Below the pieces are notes generated by a model. That model made no database searches. It was not told where the DNA came from and saw only the letters and a program-made list of their open reading frames with translations. The position numbers and the translations under genes were made by a program. This document shows positions 14,134 through 30,780 of a stretch of DNA of 64,000 bases, piece after piece (the stretch's first letter is position 1; each line of letters begins with the position of its first letter). The DNA is taken from the sequence record MG592456.1; one strand, written 5' to 3'.

Positions 14134-14652
14134 TTATTTAGAATTTCGATGTCGTCGAGATTTGCGCTTGGCTTTTCTCAATTCTTTTCGCTTCGCAACT
14201 TTATCTGCTCGACGAACTGCGTCGTAATCCGCAGCACAAGACGCAGCAAACGCATCTGGTTTGAAAACGGGCTCTTGACCCACATACCCGAAGATCGTCC
14301 CTTTAGCCTCGTTATACGCAACGTGAGACTTATGTGCGGGGTCTGGGTTGATATCAACGTGAACTTCAAACCCACGAGTACCACACATTGGCTTGACTTT
14401 CATAGCAGCTTCACCGGCTTTATATACTTCCGTCATGAGTCGACTACGTATGCCGTCTTTACACGACATATATGCTGGTTCAGTCTCAACAACTTTAAAC
14501 ACTTGAGCACCTTTGTTGCCCTCGAAATGAATAATAATTACAGTTGCGTAACTAATCATGTCGCTTTTACGTTTGCTATCGCACCCGACGTACACAGTAC
14601 TGCTCGGATGGCTGTTATTGATAGCAACTTCTATGGATTCCCAATCGAACAT
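14134..14652 (-). CDS. DUF458 RNase-H-like protein
   Basis: VYVGCDS, YATVIIIH, RLMTEV, EVHVDIN, KPDAFAAS..AD motifs; GAGGA RBS before MFDWES. Confidence 0.8.
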   Translation of the reverse strand: MFDWESIEVAINNSHPSSTVYVGCDSKRKSDMISYATVIIIHFEGNKGAQVFKVVETEPAYMSCKDGIRSRLMTEVYKAGEAAMKVKPMCGTRGFEVHVDINPDPAHKSHVAYNEAKGTIFGYVGQEPVFKPDAFAASCAADYDAVRRADKVAKRKELRKAKRKSRRHRNSK

Positions 14653-14668
14653 ATCAATTTCCTCATAC

Positions 14669-14696
14669 AAAAAAGGGTGGCTGATTGCCACCCTTT
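14669..14696 (-). terminator. intrinsic terminator between DUF2828 and DUF458
   Basis: AAAGGGTGGC-AATCA-GCCACCCTTT plus T tract on the minus strand. Confidence 0.75.
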
Positions 14697-14700
14697 ATAT

Positions 14701-16134
14701 TTAAACGTCGTAGCGCTCAACATTAACTGTTTTTAACATGATCTTGACTGGCTCAAGTTCACCGCCCAACAACGAGGTCAGGATTGACGGACTACAGCCT
14801 GATACAAGTGCAGTACCCGCAGTTCCTGTTTTAACAGGGACGTTGCCCGCTCTTGCGTGAATATTCCAGAACACTAGCTGTGGCATGTCGTAACCATGAC
14901 GAGCATAATTCGACTTAATTTCGTCGAAATTGGTTTTATTAGAGGAGCGCCACCCCGCGCTATTCGCCGTGTCGAATTCCATGTCGCTCAAGATTAGCAT
15001 CTTAGTCGGCATTTCACTCTGAGGCAAGTTAGCGCTTGTTGCTCGTTCAAGCAACACATTAAAGCAGCCGCTAATGTTAGTACTCATGTCTTCACCAGCA
15101 CGTGACATGTTGGCTAAACGAGTTTGCAAATTATCACCGATTAACTTGTGAAAGTTAGGGCGACTTGAGAATGTAACGAACTGGTCTTGGAAGACGCCTT
15201 CGTTGCGCTCTGCAATGTAGATACCAAGACTCATAGCGACGTCTTTGCAAGATACACCATCGCCATATGAGTCAGCGCCGTTAATACCACAACCCATAGA
15301 GCCTGATACATCAACTACGGGTAGAATGCGCTCGTCTGAGCCTTCCATGTAGTTCGGAAGTGCTTTCCATTGCTCATTCGCAACAACGGCATTGCCGCGA
15401 CTAACACTACGCACGACATCATATGGGTATACAGCACCCGCATTAATCTTCGCTTCGCCCTTCACAAGTGATTCGATGTAGCTAGAATACTTATCAGTTG
15501 CATTGCGACCGAACGATTTTTGATAGCGTGCTGAAGCTACAGACGGCAACTTACCAAAGTCGATCGCATCCCATTCACGCGCACACATTTTCTGCTCGAC
15601 GGTGTCTGACAATGTACTAAGAATCTTGCGCCATTGCTTTGACTTAATACCAAGAGACTTGATAGTTTTCTTAAACACATGACCGTTTGCGCTACCTTCA
15701 CGAGGGAACCACTTTGCAGCTAACGAGTTTTTATCGTTGACGATTGCATGAGTCCACAATGTGATTGCATCAGCCTCAAGATCTGTACCAAATGCACACA
15801 TCAAGTCATCGAAACGACCCAATTCTGGCACTTTAGACATCACAACACGTGCAATATCAGGGCGATTGACACACAAGCGAGTAAAGATCTTACGGAAAGT
15901 TTGACGTTCCCCAGCTCCACCGCGTACATCACGTGCCCATAGCAAGATTCGAGTTGCCAGCTCAGGATTTTCACCGAATGCTCGATCGAACATACCAAGT
16001 GACTCGTTATTACCACGCATCGCGCCAATAGTAAAAAACAAGTTTAGACACTCGTTGCCTGAAGTGCTGTGAGTCACTGCACCATTTGCGGTACGTGCAT
16101 CGTTTGTTTGCATTGCGTTTAAAAAAGCTGACAT
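14701..16134 (-). CDS. DUF2828 family protein (TROVE-like helical region plus vWA domain; Ro60-like architecture)
   Basis: RDVRGGAGER, KWFPRE, KINAGAVYPYDVV, vWA MIDAS DVSGSM, ILSDMEFD, VFWN. Confidence 0.85.
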   Translation of the reverse strand: MSAFLNAMQTNDARTANGAVTHSTSGNECLNLFFTIGAMRGNNESLGMFDRAFGENPELATRILLWARDVRGGAGERQTFRKIFTRLCVNRPDIARVVMSKVPELGRFDDLMCAFGTDLEADAITLWTHAIVNDKNSLAAKWFPREGSANGHVFKKTIKSLGIKSKQWRKILSTLSDTVEQKMCAREWDAIDFGKLPSVASARYQKSFGRNATDKYSSYIESLVKGEAKINAGAVYPYDVVRSVSRGNAVVANEQWKALPNYMEGSDERILPVVDVSGSMGCGINGADSYGDGVSCKDVAMSLGIYIAERNEGVFQDQFVTFSSRPNFHKLIGDNLQTRLANMSRAGEDMSTNISGCFNVLLERATSANLPQSEMPTKMLILSDMEFDTANSAGWRSSNKTNFDEIKSNYARHGYDMPQLVFWNIHARAGNVPVKTGTAGTALVSGCSPSILTSLLGGELEPVKIMLKTVNVERYDV

Positions 16135-19785: not shown

Positions 19786-19992
19786 TTAGTAGGCTAGACT
19801 CTGAGCGAGCCGCAATTTCTCGCGATCTGATAATTCTGTTTTTATTTCAACTACCTCCTCATCTTTTTCATCTACACTAACCGAAACCTTCTTTTTCGCA
19901 TCTGGGCCAATATTATCCCACAATGGACTTGAATACCATGCATCACTGCATTGATTACCCTTTCCGCGCCCAGCGCGTGCGTCACTACTCAT
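19786..19992 (-). CDS. hypothetical protein
   Basis: ORF overlapping the stop of 19985-20254; start uncertain. Confidence 0.45.
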   Translation of the reverse strand: MSSDARAGRGKGNQCSDAWYSSPLWDNIGPDAKKKVSVSVDEKDEEVVEIKTELSDREKLRLAQSLAY

Positions 19993-20254
19993 CAGATTTC
20001 TTCGTTGCTTGGCGTGCCAAAGCCGCAGTTCCAGCAATAGCCGCTACTTTAGCACCCGTCTTAGCAGCACTGCCCACCTTTTTTGCCTTGTCACGAAGCG
20101 AAGACTTCTTCGACTGTGGCTTGTCTTTCGACTGTGGCTTGTCTTTCGACTGTGGCTTGTCTTTCGACTGTGGCTTGTTATTTGACTTAGGCTTTTTATT
20201 CGGCTTAGCCTCTTGAAGTTGTCCCATGAACTCTTCAAAAGTTTTTTCACTCAT
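19985..20254 (-). CDS. Lys-rich putative internal head protein with KDKPQS repeats
   Basis: MSEKTFEEFMGQLQE/A leader; GGAG RBS; CTAAATA upstream. Confidence 0.7.
   Translation of the reverse strand: MSEKTFEEFMGQLQEAKPNKKPKSNNKPQSKDKPQSKDKPQSKDKPQSKKSSLRDKAKKVGSAAKTGAKVAAIAGTAALARQATKKSDE
20109..20180 (-). repeat. 18-bp coding tandem repeat, about 4 copies (KDKPQS)
   Basis: TTCGACTGTGGCTTGTCT repeated on the + strand. Confidence 0.9.
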
Positions 20255-20765: not shown

Positions 20766-20914
20766 AGACATCGGTGCAAGTTTTCGATACATTGCAATCG
20801 GATCCGAGTCATTTCCTACTCATCACACCGAGGGCGAACATTATCGCTGAGAAAGCAGCTAGTTGCCCATATTACTTTTATAGTTTAGTTTTTATTAGTT
20901 GCTGAAAAATGTCT
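20766..20914 (-). ncRNA. CAGCAA-motif RNA, long form
   Basis: AGACAUU-UUU-CAGCAACU ... GAUGUCU closing helix; follows tRNA-Ser and precedes a terminator. Confidence 0.5.
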
Positions 20915-21512: not shown

Positions 21513-21588
21513 TGGAGCTGGTACGCAGAATCGAACTGCGACCTAAGGATTTGCAATCCCCTATCCTACCTGATTAGACCATAGGAGC
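21513..21588 (-). tRNA. trnC: tRNA-Cys(GCA) with two C:C mismatches in the acceptor stem
   Basis: GGGGA-TTGCAAA-TCCTT, U73, CCA; the 5' end overlaps the endonuclease ORF. Confidence 0.75.
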
Positions 21589-22197
21589 ATGTTTACAATT
21601 ATCAAAGTGCCACCGTTTCATAACACCGCCCTTGCCAACTTTACCACAATGAGGACACGTGACTTCATCAATCGAGTGTTCTTCATAATGCCTCTTCAAA
21701 CTCTCTGAAATTTTTTGCTTTTGTGATTCAGTCTTATCTTGTTTGCCAATCTTTATACCATGTTCGACCGCCGCAGCATAACGCTCTTCGCCACGTTTTA
21801 CCCAATAATTATCAGCGTACTTCTCTCTGATTTTATCACTCACCGCACGACCAGACAACGTTTTAGAAATTTTCGCCTTAGATTCATCAGTGTGTGGTAT
21901 CCCACTACGATTAAGATGGTCGAACCCACCTTCACCACCCAACTTCAGATTATATGTCATGGAGTTTTCTACAAACTCACGATCAACATACACAGCCTCA
22001 CGCTCGTACATTTCATCAGAACTGTCACATTGTTCTAGAATTTCACACTCGAAGCTATCAACGCCATACTTGTTAATTGCACGTTTCAGAAGCTTACCGG
22101 ATCCGATATACCCATCTTCTAGGTCTTCGGTTTTGTGTGCTCCGATGTAGATCTTACCATTGGTTTTATTAGTGGTTTTATAAACAATATAATACAT
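21574..22197 (-). mobile_element. free-standing Seg-like GIY-YIG homing endonuclease gene with NUMOD3 and C-terminal CPHC..RWHFDNC domain
   Basis: IVY-KTTN..NGKIYIG..K...GYIGSG..L..AI.KYG..F..EIL; inserted in the tRNA cluster as T4 segB is. Confidence 0.85.
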
Positions 22198-23573: not shown

Positions 23574-23876
23574 ATTGTAGCAACTATTAGTTGCTATGGA
23601 TATCAAGATACAGATAATCACGAAGTGTTTTATCGTCTTTTGCTTTAATCGCGGTTGACTATTCACTTTATTCGCTAGTGAAAGCTATCGCCTGATTCAG
23701 TGACGCACCTATTCTCATGTTTCCATAAGAAGATATCTTTCTCTTGAGACAATGCAAGCACTATCCGAGTTAAGATGATCACTTTGAGTATGATTATTTT
23801 TTGCGGTACATTATCTTACTCAACATATGCGCCATGCCGAAGCAGAGGGATCACAGTATGATGAGCTTCTTAATTT

Positions 23877-24438: not shown

Positions 24439-24543
24439 TGAGTGTGTATTTACCAGCGCACCAGCGTGCATACCAAGCACTGCGAGAATCGAACTCGCGC
24501 CGTTCGTGTAAAAGACGAATTTGTTGTTTGCTGTAAACACTCA
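24439..24543 (-). ncRNA. circularly permuted tRNA mimic (YrlA-like) with CAGCAA motif and Lys anticodon loop
   Basis: terminal helix UGAGUGU/ACACUCA, UUA-CAGCAAAC, UUCGU-CUUUUAC-ACGAA, GCGAG-UUCGAUU-CUCGC T arm, loop-closed GUGC/GCAC acceptor-like stem, D-like arm; no CCA. Confidence 0.8.
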
Positions 24544-25586: not shown

Positions 25587-25721
25587 CTAATATCCCTTTA
25601 ATCTTTGTCTCTGTCTAGCAGCCTTTAACTTAGCACGCTGACCGTATTGCTTTTCTAGTTTAGCACCATGATAACTATGATACTGATAATGACAAGATAA
25701 TTTCTTATAAAGACCTTTCAT
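25587..25721 (-). CDS. small basic hypothetical protein
   Basis: GGGGG RBS before MKGLYKK. Confidence 0.55.
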   Translation of the reverse strand: MKGLYKKLSCHYQYHSYHGAKLEKQYGQRAKLKAARQRQRLKGY

Positions 25722-25747
25722 ATACCCCCCTAGATTTTGATTATAAC

Positions 25748-25805
25748 AGAATGCGTTTTGCTTGAAAGCCAATTTTCAAATTTTGTTGTTTGCTGAATAC
25801 ATTCT
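25748..25805 (-). ncRNA. minimal CAGCAA-motif RNA with Glu-type anticodon loop
   Basis: AGAAUGU-AUU-CAGCAAAC...UUGG-CUUUCAA-GCAA...GCAUUCU. Confidence 0.7.
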
Positions 25806-25836
25806 TAATCTATCACAAGACTCACGCCTTGAAATT

Positions 25837-25911
25837 TGGTGCACCCTCGCAGACTCGAACTGCGTACCTCGGGACTTCAATCCGATGCTTTTCCTGTTAA
25901 GCTAAAGGTGC
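25837..25911 (-). tRNA. trnF: tRNA-Phe(GAA), atypical anticodon arm
   Basis: TCGGA-TTGAAGT-CCCGA (A31:C39, G37), short variable loop, CCA. Confidence 0.8.
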
Positions 25912-29230: not shown

Positions 29231-29354
29231 TGGTGGAGAGAGCGGGATTCGAACCACGCGACCGAAAGATTTACTTAGTTAAAAGTTTGCAGTAGGCATT
29301 CTTGTCAGAATACACATAACATTCTTTTGCTCTACCAGACTGAGCTATCTCTCC
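29231..29354 (-). ncRNA. tRNA body with CAGCAA-type insert in the anticodon arm
   Basis: GGAGAGA/UCUCUCC-A-CCA, D arm, bulged T arm; insert GUAUUCU-GACA-AGAAUGC-CUA-CUGCAAAC. Confidence 0.75.
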
Positions 29355-29402
29355 ATTTGCAGCGCTGTGTTTACTGCATGAACACAGCGCCAATACTTCT
29401 CA

Positions 29403-29588: not shown

Positions 29589-29732
29589 GAGAGTGCATTG
29601 AGCGGGGTGCAGGAATCGAACCTGCGTCACGATCTTTGAAGGATATGCGTTTTGGTTGCTGAATACAAGCTTGTCAGCTTGCGTTTAGCTACGTGTGTTA
29701 TCCACTACACCAACCCCGCTCAATGCACTCTC
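29589..29732 (-). ncRNA. tRNA body with CAGCAA insert, UCA anticodon-like loop and 20-bp extended acceptor helix
   Basis: GCGGGGU/ACCCCGC, D and T arms; GCAAGCU-GACA-AGCUUGU-AUU-CAGCAACC; AUC-CUUCAAA-GAU; no CCA. Confidence 0.75.
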
Positions 29733-30080: not shown

Positions 30081-30332
30081 TTACGTTTGAATGATAATGC
30101 CGCTTTCAGTTTCACCTGCTTCTAGGCATTGATGCTTGATCTGTAGCTGCGTAACGGCAGCTTGCAATTCGTTAATTGCACGATCATACAGCTTCATGTT
30201 TCGCCCTTGCGAGGCAATTTGGTCAGCTTGCATGCCGATGATATATGTCAACAGTACAATGTTTTCATCCGTTGTAAGTTCTTCACCGGCATCATACTTG
30301 TCAACAACGGCTTTAGTAGATAGATCACTCAT
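30081..30332 (-). CDS. hypothetical coiled-coil protein
   Basis: ORF overlapping the gp57B stop. Confidence 0.65.
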   Translation of the reverse strand: MSDLSTKAVVDKYDAGEELTTDENIVLLTYIIGMQADQIASQGRNMKLYDRAINELQAAVTQLQIKHQCLEAGETESGIIIQT

Positions 30333-30780
30333 TGTTTTCAATCCAATTCAAATCTAGTGGCTCAACGTACTCATCTACTAGACGAATATCGAGATTAACA
30401 AATAGTGGAGTTATTTTGTCATCGTATGACAGCGTAACGTGCGGGGAGTAATCAGGGTAGTCATGTGTCCCACCAGCAGATATCAAGTCATCATGACGCT
30501 CTGAGAGCGCATCACAACTAAGTTTAGCAACGACAGCGTATTTGCCGTCTTGCGTCTTCCAGCAGTCCACATAATTAACCTTTGCTTGATAAGTGTTATC
30601 AGTCGCAGGTACATCTAGTTGTTTACGACTATACAATATAGTCGCGTGGAATTGCTTTGAATCTAATGGATTAGTTAGACGAAGAACTCGTTGCAGAGTG
30701 ATTAACTCTTGTTGACTCGCTTCGTCTAACTTAACACCGACATAAGTTCCCTGAGTCTCATTGTACTCAGAAAGATTCAT
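30325..30780 (-). CDS. 57B: gp57B, 2H phosphoesterase-like
   Basis: two HxT/S motifs (FHATILYS, PHVTLSY); T4 gene order. Confidence 0.9.
   Translation of the reverse strand: MNLSEYNETQGTYVGVKLDEASQQELITLQRVLRLTNPLDSKQFHATILYSRKQLDVPATDNTYQAKVNYVDCWKTQDGKYAVVAKLSCDALSERHDDLISAGGTHDYPDYSPHVTLSYDDKITPLFVNLDIRLVDEYVEPLDLNWIENNE

What the first reader, a model, noticed from the sequence alone, without database searches (positions are those of the whole stretch)
25748..25805. 58-nt minimal CAGCAA RNA displaying a tRNA-Glu anticodon loop
It consists only of the helix AGAAUGU/GCAUUCU, AUU-CAGCAAAC and a weak hairpin whose loop CUUUCAA is identical to that of the phage tRNA-Glu (25419). It looks like the smallest unit: protein-binding handle plus anticodon bait. 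An alternative UUGAAA/UUUCAA hairpin is also possible, so the loop assignment is uncertain.
Basis: partly seen in the sequence, partly recalled or inferred. Interest (0 to 1): 0.7.

Follow-up and report, generated by a model that had tools for sequence, protein, structure and literature searches.

The report
Y-RNA-like small RNA of a phage
The 58-nt element is a real, conserved small RNA gene in the tRNA cluster of a KVP40-like Vibrio phage, and it is most likely the RNA partner of the phage's own Ro60-like ring protein rather than a decoy carrying a tRNA-Glu anticodon loop.

Summary
The sequence, the 7-bp terminal helix and AUU-CAGCAA are present at 25748-25805 on the minus strand. The fold alone is unremarkable (z -0.99), and the CUUUCAA match to tRNA-Glu is at chance level: 32% of shuffles carry some anticodon-loop 7-mer. 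Homologues settle the structure. About 30 KVP40-like phages and three marine T4-like contigs carry the same 57-69-nt RNA. The terminal helix is 98.7% paired, with compensatory changes at 5 of 7 pairs. The handle (7-bp helix, 3 nt, CNGCA) recurs in larger tRNA-like RNAs, inside about 45-nt insertions in phage tRNA genes, and around circularly permuted tRNA-Leu genes. Every handle-bearing phage checked encodes a DUF2828/DUF7788 protein (window 14701-16134) that looks like Ro60 (TROVE plus vWA). T4 has neither. In three distant lineages the RNA lies within 500 nt downstream of that gene. Best reading: a Y-RNA-like partner of a divergent Ro60, not yet described. It also resembles Dictyostelium Class I RNAs feature by feature, which is unexplained. 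Binding and expression are untested.

The parts
25748..25805 (-). A-type small RNA (the finding). It consists of a terminal helix, a spacer, the CNGCAA motif, one inner hairpin and the 3' helix strand.
   Evidence: Sequence. Model R1 scores it 69.4 bits.
25799..25805 (-). 5' strand of the terminal helix, AGAAUGU. It is preceded by the conserved UUA (25806-25808), giving the conserved start ..AAG.
   Evidence: The helix is 98.7% paired over 11 sequences. Five of 7 pairs show compensatory changes and the G-C second pair is invariant.
25790..25798 (-). Spacer AUU plus motif CAGCAA. Family-wide the pattern is N-U-N-C-N-G-C-A(-A). It is predicted to be single-stranded.
   Evidence: Invariant columns in alignments A2, A4 and A6. 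Three exact copies of the 16-nt form occur in the genome.
25762..25779 (-). Inner hairpin UUGAAA / loop AUUGGC / UUUCAA.
   Evidence: It is in the MFE, with pair probabilities 0.71-0.86. Homologues have a hairpin at the same place with a different stem sequence (CUUUU/AAAAG) and AUUUGGA-type loops.
25748..25754 (-). 3' strand of the terminal helix, GCAUUCU. It is followed by the conserved GUU (25745-25747), giving the conserved end CUGU.
24439..24543 (-). B-type paralogue. The same handle (UGAGUGU-UUA-CAGCAAAC ... ACACUCA) closes a tRNA-like body made of an anticodon-like arm (loop CUUUUAC), a T arm and a D-like hairpin with loop UUGGUAU. It is syntenic, after tRNA-Gln, in KVP40, F86, nt-1, ValKK3, K566 and VS1.
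   Evidence: Rfam tRNA model 34.9 bits over part of it. Repeats D13 and D17. Folds and relatives.
23612..23816 (-). F-type paralogue (205 nt): AGAUAAU-GUA-CCGCAAAA ... AUUAUCU-GU. It lies between tRNA-Arg and tRNA-Met, as in KVP40.
   Evidence: The helix changes compensatorily against KVP40 (AGACAAU/AUUGUCU) and F86 (AGGCAAU/AUUGCCU). The structure of the interior was not analysed.
20766..20914 (-). E-type paralogue after tRNA-Ser: AGACAUU-UUU-CAGCAAC ... GAUGUCU-GU.
   Evidence: The motif and 5' strand are conserved in six phages. The interior is poorly conserved.
29601..29719 (-). tRNA-like gene C2 (GenBank 'tRNA-OTHER'; anticodon-position loop CUUCAAA; no encoded CCA). It carries the hairpin form of the handle at 29649-29682: GCAAGCU-GACA-AGCUUGU-AUU-CAGCAAC.
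   Evidence: (fold z -3.41).
29234..29354 (-). tRNA-Asn(GUU)-like gene D, with a roughly 46-nt insertion in or next to the anticodon loop. The insertion carries the hairpin form of the handle at 29280-29313: GUAUUCU-GACA-AGAAUGC-CUA-CUGCAAAC. The hairpin stem is 6/7 identical to the terminal helix of the finding.
   Evidence: Rfam tRNA model 52.1 bits..
14701..16134 (-). Candidate protein partner: a 477-aa DUF2828 + DUF7788 protein (PHROG 850, 'RNA-binding protein') that looks like Ro60 (TROVE plus vWA). It is on the same strand, 9.6 kb from the finding.
   Evidence: Pfam scan. PHROG. Presence and absence across phages. Ro60 likeness.

Best explanation
The element is a small non-coding RNA gene of about 58-64 nt.

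Proposed mechanism:
1. It is co-transcribed with the phage's minus-strand tRNA cluster.
2. It is freed by the processing that matures the neighbouring tRNAs.
3. Its two ends pair into a 7-bp helix. The sequence of the helix drifts, but its length, its second G-C pair and its flanks (A-AG ... CU-GU) are kept.
4. Directly after the 5' strand come three nucleotides with a fixed central U, then the single-stranded motif C-N-G-C-A-A.
5. The rest is an A-rich linker and one small hairpin.
6. The helix plus motif is a handle that docks the phage's own Ro60-like ring protein (TROVE-like HEAT ring plus vWA domain, window 14701-16134).
7. The RNA would then act as Y RNAs do for Ro60: it occupies or gates the ring and tethers it to other factors such as exoribonucleases or RNA-repair enzymes.

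The larger paralogues carry the same handle on tRNA-like bodies. The handle is also embedded in several phage tRNA genes, so the same protein would be brought to those RNAs.

Shown here: the sequence, the conservation, the helix and inner hairpin by covariation, the family, the genomic linkage to the protein gene, and the Ro60 likeness of the protein.

Inferred: transcription and processing, binding, and everything downstream of binding.
For: 1. It is a real structured RNA.
- It is conserved but unannotated in 30 Vibrio phage records.
- Model R1, built from nine copies, finds untrained copies in F86 (51.8 bits), D484 (39.4), K566 (35.6) and a marine contig (24.9 bits, E 0.002).
- The terminal helix is 98.7% paired in 11 sequences, with compensatory changes at 5 of 7 pairs. 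No shuffle out of 500 reaches the observed pairing or covariation score.
- The inner hairpin keeps its place with a different stem sequence.

2. Its position favours a tRNA-like processing unit.
- In the relatives it sits 5 nt after the CCA of tRNA-Trp and about 12 nt before the next tRNA.

3. The handle defines a family.
- Alignment A4 of 23 hairpin-form copies has U, C, G, C, A invariant and all 7 stem pairs covarying, with 96.9% paired.
- The bracket-form ends A-AG/CU-G equal the hairpin-form loop context CU-GNNA-AG.

4. The protein link.
- PF11443 is found in MG592456, KVP40, F86 and S13, and not in T4, which also lacks the RNA module.
- In Cronobacter phage S13 the gene lies just upstream of three handle-bearing tRNA(-like) genes.
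- In marine T4-like contigs whose protein is only about 53% identical, an A-type RNA lies 15 to about 500 nt downstream of the gene. The helix there is AGGUUCC/GGAACCU, or UGGUUCC/GGAACCA in L163.

5. The protein is Ro60-like.
- With its own families left out, about 80 of the 100 nearest named ESM-Atlas clusters are TROVE plus vWA_Ro60, scoring 0.92-0.93 and including chordate RO60.
- A TROVE model aligns to a DUF2828/DUF7788 model at TM 0.65-0.68 over 446 residues.
- 9 of 34 homologues hit Pfam vWA_Ro60 and 12 of 34 hit VWA_2.
- DVSGSM (a MIDAS motif) is invariant.
- There is a weak profile hit to the Thermus-phage Ro60 structure.

6. Precedent.
- Y RNAs are encoded next to Ro60 genes in more than 250 bacteria and phages and often carry tRNA-like domains (PMC4201824).
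- A Thermus-phage Ro60 binds two adjacent Y-like RNAs and PNPase (PMC12135203).
Against: - No expression or binding data exist. No infection transcriptome was found, and the complex predictor did not run.
- In the window the gene and the RNA are 9.6 kb apart, not adjacent.
- The canonical Ro60-binding motif of bacterial Y RNAs (GNCGAAN0-1G) is absent. The Rfam YrlA model gives no hit on the element.
- The Ro60 likeness of the protein rests on language-model features, predicted-model comparisons and weak HMM hits. No structure could be predicted here.
- Four of the eight gene contexts examined have no adjacent RNA.
- The thermodynamic signal of the element itself is nil.
Confidence: 0.55

Rival explanations
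1. The helix plus CNGCA module is the cis-signal of an RNA cutting-and-joining system, a functional analogue of the archaeal and algal bulge-helix-bulge system. On this reading the roughly 45-nt insertions are protein-dependent tRNA introns, and the permuted tRNA-Leu genes are matured through joining of their ends. The 58-nt element would be a minimal, body-less substrate that may end up as a tiny circular RNA or that titrates the machinery. This rival is compatible with the Ro60-like protein serving as the platform.
For: - Insertions carrying the module sit at 26/27, 28/29, 31/32 and 37-39 of otherwise complete tRNAs.
- The Rfam tRNA model still scores these tRNAs at 40.9-56.9 bits.
- In the C and G types, removing the insert restores a perfect 5-bp anticodon stem (read directly from the sequences).
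- Ci1 and S13 carry 3'-half-before-5'-half tRNA-Leu(UAA) genes bracketed by the handle. After rotation and removal of the module, ARAGORN calls a canonical cloverleaf.
- A 2H phosphoesterase (57B) and, in one marine contig, an RNA ligase plus kinase lie nearby.
- Iyer et al. describe TROVE proteins as RNA-repair platforms in jumbo phages (PMC7824862).
Against: - No spliced, ligated or circular product has been observed.
- No endonuclease candidate was found among the cluster ORFs.
- The distances from the motif to the inferred junctions vary from 11 to 22 nt, so there is no fixed cleavage rule.
- The insertion interior is strongly conserved in sequence (85.7% identity between a Vibrio phage and a Cronobacter phage). 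That is unlike introns that are merely removed.
- The brute-force deletion test with ARAGORN was uninformative.
Confidence: 0.2
2. One reading: the element is a decoy that displays a tRNA-Glu anticodon loop to a Glu-specific anticodon nuclease such as RloC.
For: - The 7-mer CUUUCAA equals the tRNA-Glu anticodon loop.
- The hairpin lies where paralogue B has its anticodon-like arm.
- Most homologous loops have 7 nt with U at position 2 and a purine at position 6.
Against: - CUUUCAA is base-paired in the favoured and conserved hairpin. The displaying hairpin is energetically unfavourable (-1.3 against -5.0 kcal/mol).
- No homologue has CUUUCAA or a UUC triplet in the loop.
- A match to some anticodon-loop 7-mer occurs in 32% of shuffles.
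- There is no T arm or D arm to give a tRNA shape.
Confidence: 0.04
3. The element is only the promoter and 5' leader of the small ORF NVP1081O_316 (25587-25721).
For: TGTTATAAT, an extended -10 element, starts right at the 3' strand of the helix. A GGGGGG Shine-Dalgarno sequence and an ATG follow. The ORF has weak homologues in two KVP40-like phages.
Against: - The consensus scan finds no sigma-70-type promoter here.
- In all relatives the element is followed by a tRNA, not an ORF. The aligned flank there reads GUUUAAUUU or GUUUUAUUC.
- The compensatory changes argue for RNA pairing.
- The marine copies lie 3' of a gene and 5' of another RNA.
Confidence: 0.04
4. The element is a decaying remnant of a tRNA or permuted tRNA gene with no function of its own.
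For: It shares 16-17 nt (CAGCAAACAACAAA..UU) with the tRNA-like paralogue B. It looks like B stripped of its T and D arms.
Against: It is kept at about 58 nt, with compensatory helix changes and invariant motif positions, across Schizotequatrovirus, Mylasvirus and unrelated marine T4-like phages.
Confidence: 0.07

Closest known systems
Y RNAs and Y-like RNAs of bacteria and phages (YrlA/YrlB, Rfam RF02553; Yrl1/Yrl2 of Thermus phage phiLo)
   Same: - They are small RNAs of about 60-130 nt whose 5' and 3' ends pair into a stem that carries a conserved protein-binding motif.
- The rest of the RNA is variable.
- Several paralogues occur per genome, and some have tRNA-like domains.
- They are encoded near a Ro60-family (TROVE plus vWA) gene, including in phages (PMC4201824, PMC12135203).
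   Different: - The protein belongs to separate Pfam families (DUF2828/DUF7788), not TROVE PF05731.
- The motif is N-U-N-CNGCAA beside a 7-bp helix, not GNCGAAN0-1G in a bulged stem.
- The YrlA model gives no hit.
- The 58-nt member has no tRNA-like domain.
- The RNAs sit in a tRNA cluster, and the handle also occurs inside tRNA genes and around permuted tRNAs. None of that is known for Y RNAs.
- Binding is untested.
Class I RNAs of dictyostelid social amoebas (Rfam RF01414; Kjellin et al. 2021, PMC7919456)
   Same: - Length (42-65 nt, median about 60).
- A short stem joining the 5' and 3' ends whose structure, not sequence, is kept.
- A conserved start AAG and end CUGU, with the G pairing the C.
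- A motif (C)CUUACAGCAA right after the 5' stem strand, unpaired. Its near-invariant C6, C9, A10 and A11 coincide with the phage invariants, and its position 7 is free in both families.
- An A/U-rich variable remainder.
- All phage copies scanned against Rfam (7 phages; F86, K566/D484 were not scanned, the marine L160 copy gave no hit) give full-length hits of 24.7-31.8 bits.
   Different: - The hits are below Rfam's gathering score of 41.5.
- Class I RNAs are eukaryotic nuclear genes with a DUSE promoter, and the phage RNAs have nothing comparable.
- The stem is 6 bp in Class I RNAs and 7 bp here.
- Class I RNAs are known to bind the RRM protein Rnp1A. No link to a TROVE-family protein is known.
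- Kjellin et al. (PMC7919456) report that the class is absent outside Dictyostelia.
- Whether the likeness reflects descent, a shared kind of partner or chance is open.
Phage T4 stable RNAs species 1 and 2 (rnaC, rnaD)
   Same: They are small stable RNAs of unknown function encoded inside the tRNA cluster of a T4-like phage and matured with the tRNAs.
   Different: T4 has no handle (7-bp helix, 3 nt, CNGCA), no R1 hit and no DUF2828 gene. There is no sequence similarity.
Bulge-helix-bulge introns and circularly permuted or split tRNA genes of archaea and some algae
   Same: One small RNA motif occurs in three settings: within insertions in tRNAs, between the leader and trailer of permuted tRNA genes, and around other small RNAs.
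   Different: The motif is not a 3-4-3 bulge-helix-bulge. It lies in the middle of the insertion, not at the exon borders. No splicing endonuclease is known in bacteria or these phages, and no processing has been shown.
tRNA (RF00005)
   Same: The genomic slot is between tRNAs. The terminal helix has 7 bp, like an acceptor stem. One hairpin lies where paralogue B has its anticodon-like arm.
   Different: There is no D arm, T arm or CCA. Neither ARAGORN nor the Rfam tRNA model calls it.

Membership tests
Y RNA / YrlA-type Ro60 partner RNA | Encoded close to a Ro60-family (TROVE plus vWA) gene | tested here: met
   The same phage encodes a Ro60-like DUF2828/DUF7788 protein 9.6 kb away. The RNA lies within about 500 nt downstream of the gene in S13/Ci1 and in two marine lineages. 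Caveat: the protein is a divergent family, and four other contexts lack an adjacent RNA.
Y RNA / YrlA-type Ro60 partner RNA | The 5' and 3' ends pair into a stem that holds the conserved binding site | tested here: met
   A 7-bp terminal helix with covariation and invariant flanking and motif positions.
Y RNA / YrlA-type Ro60 partner RNA | Conserved GNCGAAN0-1G (CGAA) motif, and an Rfam YrlA model score of at least 69 bits | tested here: not met
   The motif is CNGCAA. There is no YrlA hit on 25748-25805 at E up to 5.
Y RNA / YrlA-type Ro60 partner RNA | tRNA-like domain (true of YrlA, not of all Y RNAs) | tested here: not met
   Absent from the 58-nt element. Present in paralogue B, which has an anticodon-like arm, a T arm and a D-like arm.
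Y RNA / YrlA-type Ro60 partner RNA | Physically bound by the Ro60-family protein | not testable with these tools
   The complex prediction was not run by the tool. The test needs EMSA, RIP or CLIP.
Dictyostelium Class I RNA (RF01414) | Covariance-model score at or above the gathering score (41.5 bits) | tested here: not met
   24.7 bits in the window. 27.0-31.8 bits in five relatives. All hits are full length, 1-56 of 56.
Dictyostelium Class I RNA (RF01414) | Length 42-65 nt, a terminal stem with compensatory changes, the motif next to the 5' stem strand, and AAG start with CUGU end | tested here: met
   Alignments A2 and A6 and pair counts, compared with the description in PMC7919456.
Dictyostelium Class I RNA (RF01414) | DUSE promoter about 60 nt upstream, and a dictyostelid nuclear gene | tested here: not met
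   This is a phage gene inside a bacterial-type tRNA polycistron.
tRNA | Cloverleaf with D, anticodon and T arms, recognised by ARAGORN or RF00005 | tested here: not met
   No call at 25748-25805.
   CUUUCAA lies in the stem of the favoured and conserved hairpin. It is absent from all homologues. The match is at chance level.
Bulge-helix-bulge intron / permuted tRNA system | A 3-nt bulge, 4-bp helix, 3-nt bulge at the junctions, and a splicing endonuclease | tested here: inconclusive
   No BHB geometry was seen by eye in the C, D, G and S13/Ci1 modules. No systematic search was done, and no endonuclease search beyond Pfam and PHROGs of the cluster ORFs.

The most novel reading that the evidence does not exclude
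The 7-bp helix plus N-U-N-CNGCAA handle is the recognition element of a so far undescribed and very widespread RNP system of T4-like phages, built on a divergent Ro60 (DUF2828/DUF7788, more than 8,700 clusters at 50% identity). The system would act on free small RNAs, on tRNAs carrying the handle as a roughly 45-nt insertion, and on circularly permuted tRNA genes, which implies RNA cutting and joining in phage-infected bacteria. The enigmatic Class I RNAs of Dictyostelium would be the same kind of RNA, that is, partner RNAs of a TROVE-family protein, by descent or by convergence.
Probability: 0.2. Interest if true: 0.9.

Novelty: new variant of a known kind. Interest (0 to 1): 0.75.

Why it matters
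- If the RNA is the partner of the DUF2828/DUF7788 protein, it assigns a ligand and a testable function to one of the commonest 'RNA-binding protein' families of marine and enteric T4-like phages.
- It would extend the Ro60 and Y RNA paradigm to a second protein family with a different RNA code.
- It explains several 'pseudo-tRNA' and 'tRNA-OTHER' annotations in KVP40-like genomes.
- The same handle inside tRNA genes and around permuted tRNA-Leu genes raises the possibility of protein-dependent tRNA splicing or end-joining in phages. To my knowledge, permuted tRNA genes and such splicing have been reported only for archaea and eukaryotes (from memory; no paper retrieved here states it).
- The point-by-point likeness to Dictyostelium Class I RNAs, whose function has been open for twenty years, gives a concrete hypothesis to test there: do they bind a TROVE-family protein?

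Tried and rejected
- Exact-pattern scans of IMG/VR with two 17-18-nt forms of the motif gave 107 and 24 stretches. Nearly all were chance matches inside coding sequence.
- blastn of the element with its flanks found only the phage itself. The search for related loci with 57B found only KVP40 and VH7D.
- The short pattern WTNCWGCAAMC and the loose rule '7-nt helix + 2-3 nt + CNGCA + partner within 400 nt' are not specific.
- The brute-force deletion scan with ARAGORN was too permissive to locate intron borders.
- The promoter scan found nothing at the element.
- Pfam and PHROGs on nine small ORFs of the tRNA cluster gave no nuclease, ligase or RNA-binding domain.
- Ideas considered from memory and dropped for lack of fit: MotA-box or early promoter, boxA/nut antitermination, CRISPR-repeat mimic, hammerhead and other small ribozymes (no Rfam hit), C/D or H/ACA guide, Hfq ARN site, IS200/IS605-like element.
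- The RNA-seq search for KVP40 found no infection transcriptome.
- The profile search of protein representatives listed only close relatives, so it could not bridge to TROVE.
- Literature searches found no description of the RNA family, the insertions or the permuted tRNAs.
Full report
**Where the window comes from.** The window is part of Vibrio phage 1.081.O._10N.286.52.C2 (MG592456.1), a KVP40-like T4-type jumbo phage. Twenty-six tRNA genes lie on the minus strand between 20.9 and 28.5 kb. The finding sits between tRNA-Phe (25837-25911) and a 44-codon ORF (25587-25721).

**The observation.**
- The fold of the 58-mer is no better than that of shuffles: -8.2 kcal/mol, z -0.99.
- The CUUUCAA 7-mer is identical to the anticodon loop of the phage tRNA-Glu. 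However, 32% of dinucleotide shuffles of the 58-mer contain one of the 24 anticodon-loop 7-mers of this phage.
- The hairpin that would expose CUUUCAA costs energy relative to the terminal helix alone (-1.3 against -2.79 kcal/mol).
- So the sequence is there, but neither the fold nor the anticodon identity is evidence by itself.

**Comparative evidence that the element is real.**
- The 16-nt motif around CAGCAA occurs three times in the 239-kb genome, always on the tRNA strand inside the tRNA cluster. The reversed control occurs 0 times (repeats D13 and D17).
- A blastn search with the KVP40 counterpart finds the element, unannotated, in 30 Vibrio phage records.
- In those phages it lies 5 nt after the CCA of tRNA-Trp and about 12 nt before the next tRNA.
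- A covariance model built from nine copies (R1) finds untrained copies in F86 (51.8 bits), D484 (39.4) and K566 (35.6). In these the motif reads CUGCAA.
- Over 11 sequences, including three from unrelated marine T4-like contigs, the terminal helix is 98.7% paired. Five of its seven pairs show compensatory changes (AGAAUGU/GCAUUCU, AGCAAUC/GAUUGCU, AGUAAUC/GAUUACU, AGGUUCC/GGAACCU, UGGUUCC/GGAACCA), and the second pair, G-C, is invariant.
- The inner hairpin keeps its position while its stem sequence changes (UUGAAA/UUUCAA in the window, CUUUU/AAAAG or U-run/A-run elsewhere). Its loops are AUUUGGA, AUUUGCA, AUUUUAA, AUUUUGA, AUUUGAA(G) and AUUGGC.
- CUUUCAA is therefore stem, and no homologue offers a Glu anticodon.

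**The handle is shared by a family.**
- The handle is a helix of 7 bp, then three nucleotides with a fixed central U, then C-N-G-C-A(-A). It recurs in two topologies.
- Bracket form: the helix joins the two ends of an RNA. In the window these are the finding (58 nt), B (24439-24543), F (23612-23816) and E (20766-20914). The relatives add an 87-nt H type. B encloses an anticodon-like arm, a T arm and a D-like hairpin.
- Hairpin form: the same helix is closed by a GNNA loop and lies inside an insertion of about 45 nt in otherwise complete tRNA genes. In the window these are C2 (29601-29719) and D (29234-29354). KVP40, nt-1, ValKK3, VS1, F86 and K566 have three to five each.
- In 23 hairpin-form copies all seven stem pairs covary (96.9% paired), and U, C, G, C, A are invariant.
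- The outer end of the bracket helix (A-AG ... CU-G) equals the loop context of the hairpin form (CU-GNNA-AG). The two forms are therefore circular permutations of one motif.
- A blastn search with C2 also hits Cronobacter phages S13 and LPCS28 and Citrobacter phage Ci1. Identity is 85.7% over the 42-nt module, although the tRNA bodies differ.
- Those phages carry two insertion-bearing tRNAs each. They also carry a gene in which the 3' half of a tRNA-Leu(UAA) precedes its 5' half, the whole being bracketed by the handle. After rotation and removal of the module, ARAGORN draws a canonical long-arm tRNA-Leu.
- T4 has none of this.

**A candidate protein partner.**
- In S13 the three handle-bearing genes lie just downstream of a 467-aa protein with DUF2828 and DUF7788 domains.
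- The same family is encoded by 1.081.O (window 14701-16134, same strand), KVP40 and F86, but not by T4. It is PHROG 850, 'RNA-binding protein'.
- In marine T4-like contigs whose protein is only about 53% identical to the window's, a 57-59-nt A-type RNA lies 15 nt (L160, L161) or one small ORF (L158, L163) downstream of the gene. A second, larger bracket RNA and a terminator follow it.
- Three independent lineages with the RNA within 0.5 kb of the gene, in genomes of 150-250 kb, is hard to ascribe to chance.
- Four other contexts, and the Vibrio phages, have the RNAs kilobases away.

**The protein looks like Ro60.**
- When its own two families are excluded, about 80 of the 100 nearest named ESM-Atlas clusters are TROVE plus vWA_Ro60 (scores 0.92-0.93, including chordate RO60).
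- A TROVE cluster model superposes on a DUF2828/DUF7788 model at TM 0.65-0.68 over 446 residues.
- Nine of 34 homologues hit Pfam vWA_Ro60 and twelve hit VWA_2.
- A DVSGSM MIDAS motif is invariant.
- The family profile weakly hits the Thermus-phage Ro60 structure.
- A structure prediction could not be obtained.
- The family is very large: 8,708 clusters at 50% identity.

**Most likely mechanism.**
- Ro60 proteins bind Y RNAs through a conserved site in the stem formed by the RNA's two ends.
- Bacterial and phage Y RNAs are encoded beside the Ro60 gene and often contain a tRNA-like domain (PMC4201824).
- A Thermus-phage Ro60 binds two adjacent Y-like RNAs and recruits host PNPase (PMC12135203).
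- Iyer et al. regard phage TROVE proteins as RNA-repair platforms with a tRNA-like partner (PMC7824862).
- The element fits this pattern. It has a terminal stem with a conserved single-stranded motif beside it, a variable rest, several paralogues (some tRNA-like) and linkage to a Ro60-like gene.
- I therefore read it as the minimal Y-RNA-like partner of a divergent Ro60.
- Transcription with the tRNAs, release by tRNA processing, binding and downstream action are inferences.
- It is not a member of the YrlA family as defined. The CGAA motif and the Rfam model are not matched.

**Rivals.**
- The handle may instead, or in addition, mark RNAs for cutting and joining. The insertions restore perfect anticodon stems when removed, and the permuted tRNA-Leu needs its ends joined to become a tRNA. 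However, no product, no nuclease and no fixed cleavage geometry were found.
- The promoter/leader reading rests on TGTTATAAT next to the helix in this phage only. It is contradicted by the relatives and by the scan.
- A functionless relic is contradicted by the covariation.
- The anticodon-bait reading fails, as described above.

**An unexplained likeness.**
- At relaxed thresholds Rfam aligns every A-type copy full length to the Dictyostelium Class I RNA model: 24.7 bits in the window, up to 31.8 bits (E 1.8e-4 for the 241 nt searched) in ValKK3 and phi-Grn1. The gathering score is 41.5.
- The published description of Class I RNAs (PMC7919456) lists these features: about 60 nt; a short terminal stem kept by compensatory changes; start AAG and end CUGU, with the G pairing the C; and the unpaired motif CCUUACAGCAA next to the 5' stem strand, with C6, C9, A10 and A11 near-invariant.
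- This matches the phage RNA point by point, including the free position between C and G.
- The eukaryotic promoter is of course absent, and the score threshold is not met, so I do not file the element there. Whether this is descent, a shared kind of partner or coincidence cannot be decided here.

**Verdict.** The element is a genuine, conserved and so far unannotated small RNA. It is the smallest member of a family that no Rfam model or paper found here describes. The anticodon-bait idea is wrong in its particulars, while the 'handle' idea is probably right. The most likely role is partner RNA of a Ro60-like phage protein (confidence about 0.55). The insertion-bearing and permuted tRNA genes that share the handle are a separate lead and are arguably more surprising.

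Noticed in passing
window 29601-29719 and 29234-29354 (minus); L138 13121, 13508, 13749, 13872, 15546; L137 13143, 13509, 13643; L150 2471-2713; L151 2364-2598: tRNA genes of T4-like phages carry conserved insertions of about 45 nt: a 7-bp hairpin with a GNNA loop, 3 nt, then CNGCA. The insertions sit at positions 26/27, 28/29, 31/32 or 37-39. GenBank lists them as tRNA-OTHER, pseudo or long tRNAs. In the C and G types, removing the insert restores a perfect anticodon stem. They look like small non-group-I tRNA introns or built-in protein handles.
   Followed up: partly
L151 2615-2745 (Citrobacter phage Ci1); L150 2729-2863 (Cronobacter phage S13): These are circularly permuted tRNA-Leu(UAA) genes. 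The 3' half with T arm (and CCA in S13) precedes the 5' half, and the whole is bracketed by the 7-bp helix plus CUA-CWGCA handle. After in-silico rotation, ARAGORN calls a canonical tRNA-Leu. To my knowledge permuted tRNA genes have not been reported from bacteria or phages.
   Followed up: partly
window 25745-25808 (minus); L140 18570-18627; L146-L149: Every A-type copy scanned, except the marine L160 copy, is aligned full length to the Rfam Dictyostelium Class I RNA model, below threshold (24.7-31.8 bits against 41.5). Each shares its AAG start, CUGU end, terminal stem and CAGCAA motif.
   Followed up: partly
window 14701-16134 (minus): A 477-aa DUF2828/DUF7788 protein (PHROG 850) resembles Ro60 (TROVE plus vWA, with an invariant DVSGSM). 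The family has more than 8,700 clusters at 50% identity in metagenomes. An RNaseH-like ORF (14134-14691) follows it here and in two metagenomic contigs.
   Followed up: partly
L160 11506-11790; L158 11990-12290; L163 from 7850: In marine T4-like contigs a second, larger bracket RNA of about 270 nt (GGAUMGG-UA-CAGCAAAAAG ... CNAUCC) follows the A-type RNA downstream of the Ro60-like gene. It ends at a strong terminator. No Rfam family matches it.
   Followed up: no
window 25587-25721 (minus): Small ORF NVP1081O_316 (44 aa, basic C-terminus) lies directly after the element. It is preceded by TGTTATAAT and a GGGGGG Shine-Dalgarno sequence. There are weak tblastn matches in Vibrio phages V05 and VH1_2019, and no Pfam or PHROG family.
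   Followed up: partly
window 21574-22197 (minus): A GIY-YIG/NUMOD3 homing-endonuclease-like gene lies inside the tRNA cluster. Its 3' end overlaps tRNA-Cys (21513-21588). This recalls segB in the T4 tRNA cluster.
   Followed up: no
window 30325-30780 (minus): A 57B-like 2H phosphoesterase ('RNA ligase/cyclic nucleotide phosphodiesterase') lies immediately upstream of the tRNA cluster. The position is syntenic in all KVP40-like phages, and in T4 57B also lies upstream of the tRNA cluster, separated from it by ipI and trna.2-trna.4.
   Followed up: no
window ~29361-29392 (minus): A very stable hairpin (a 10-bp G+C-rich stem around CAUGCAGU) lies just upstream of the insertion-bearing tRNA D. 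Its role is unknown.
   Followed up: no
window 19985-20254 (minus): This ORF has tandem KPQSKD repeats: 18-nt DNA repeats seen as four equally spaced matches on the plus strand.
   Followed up: no
L138 17530-17616; L139 18495-18581; L140 18067-18153; L143 17793-17879: An 87-nt bracket-form RNA (H type, AGCUUGC-AUA-CUGCAA ... GCAAGCU-GU) has a conserved internal hairpin. It is present in KVP40, nt-1, ValKK3 and VS1 but was not found in the window.
   Followed up: no
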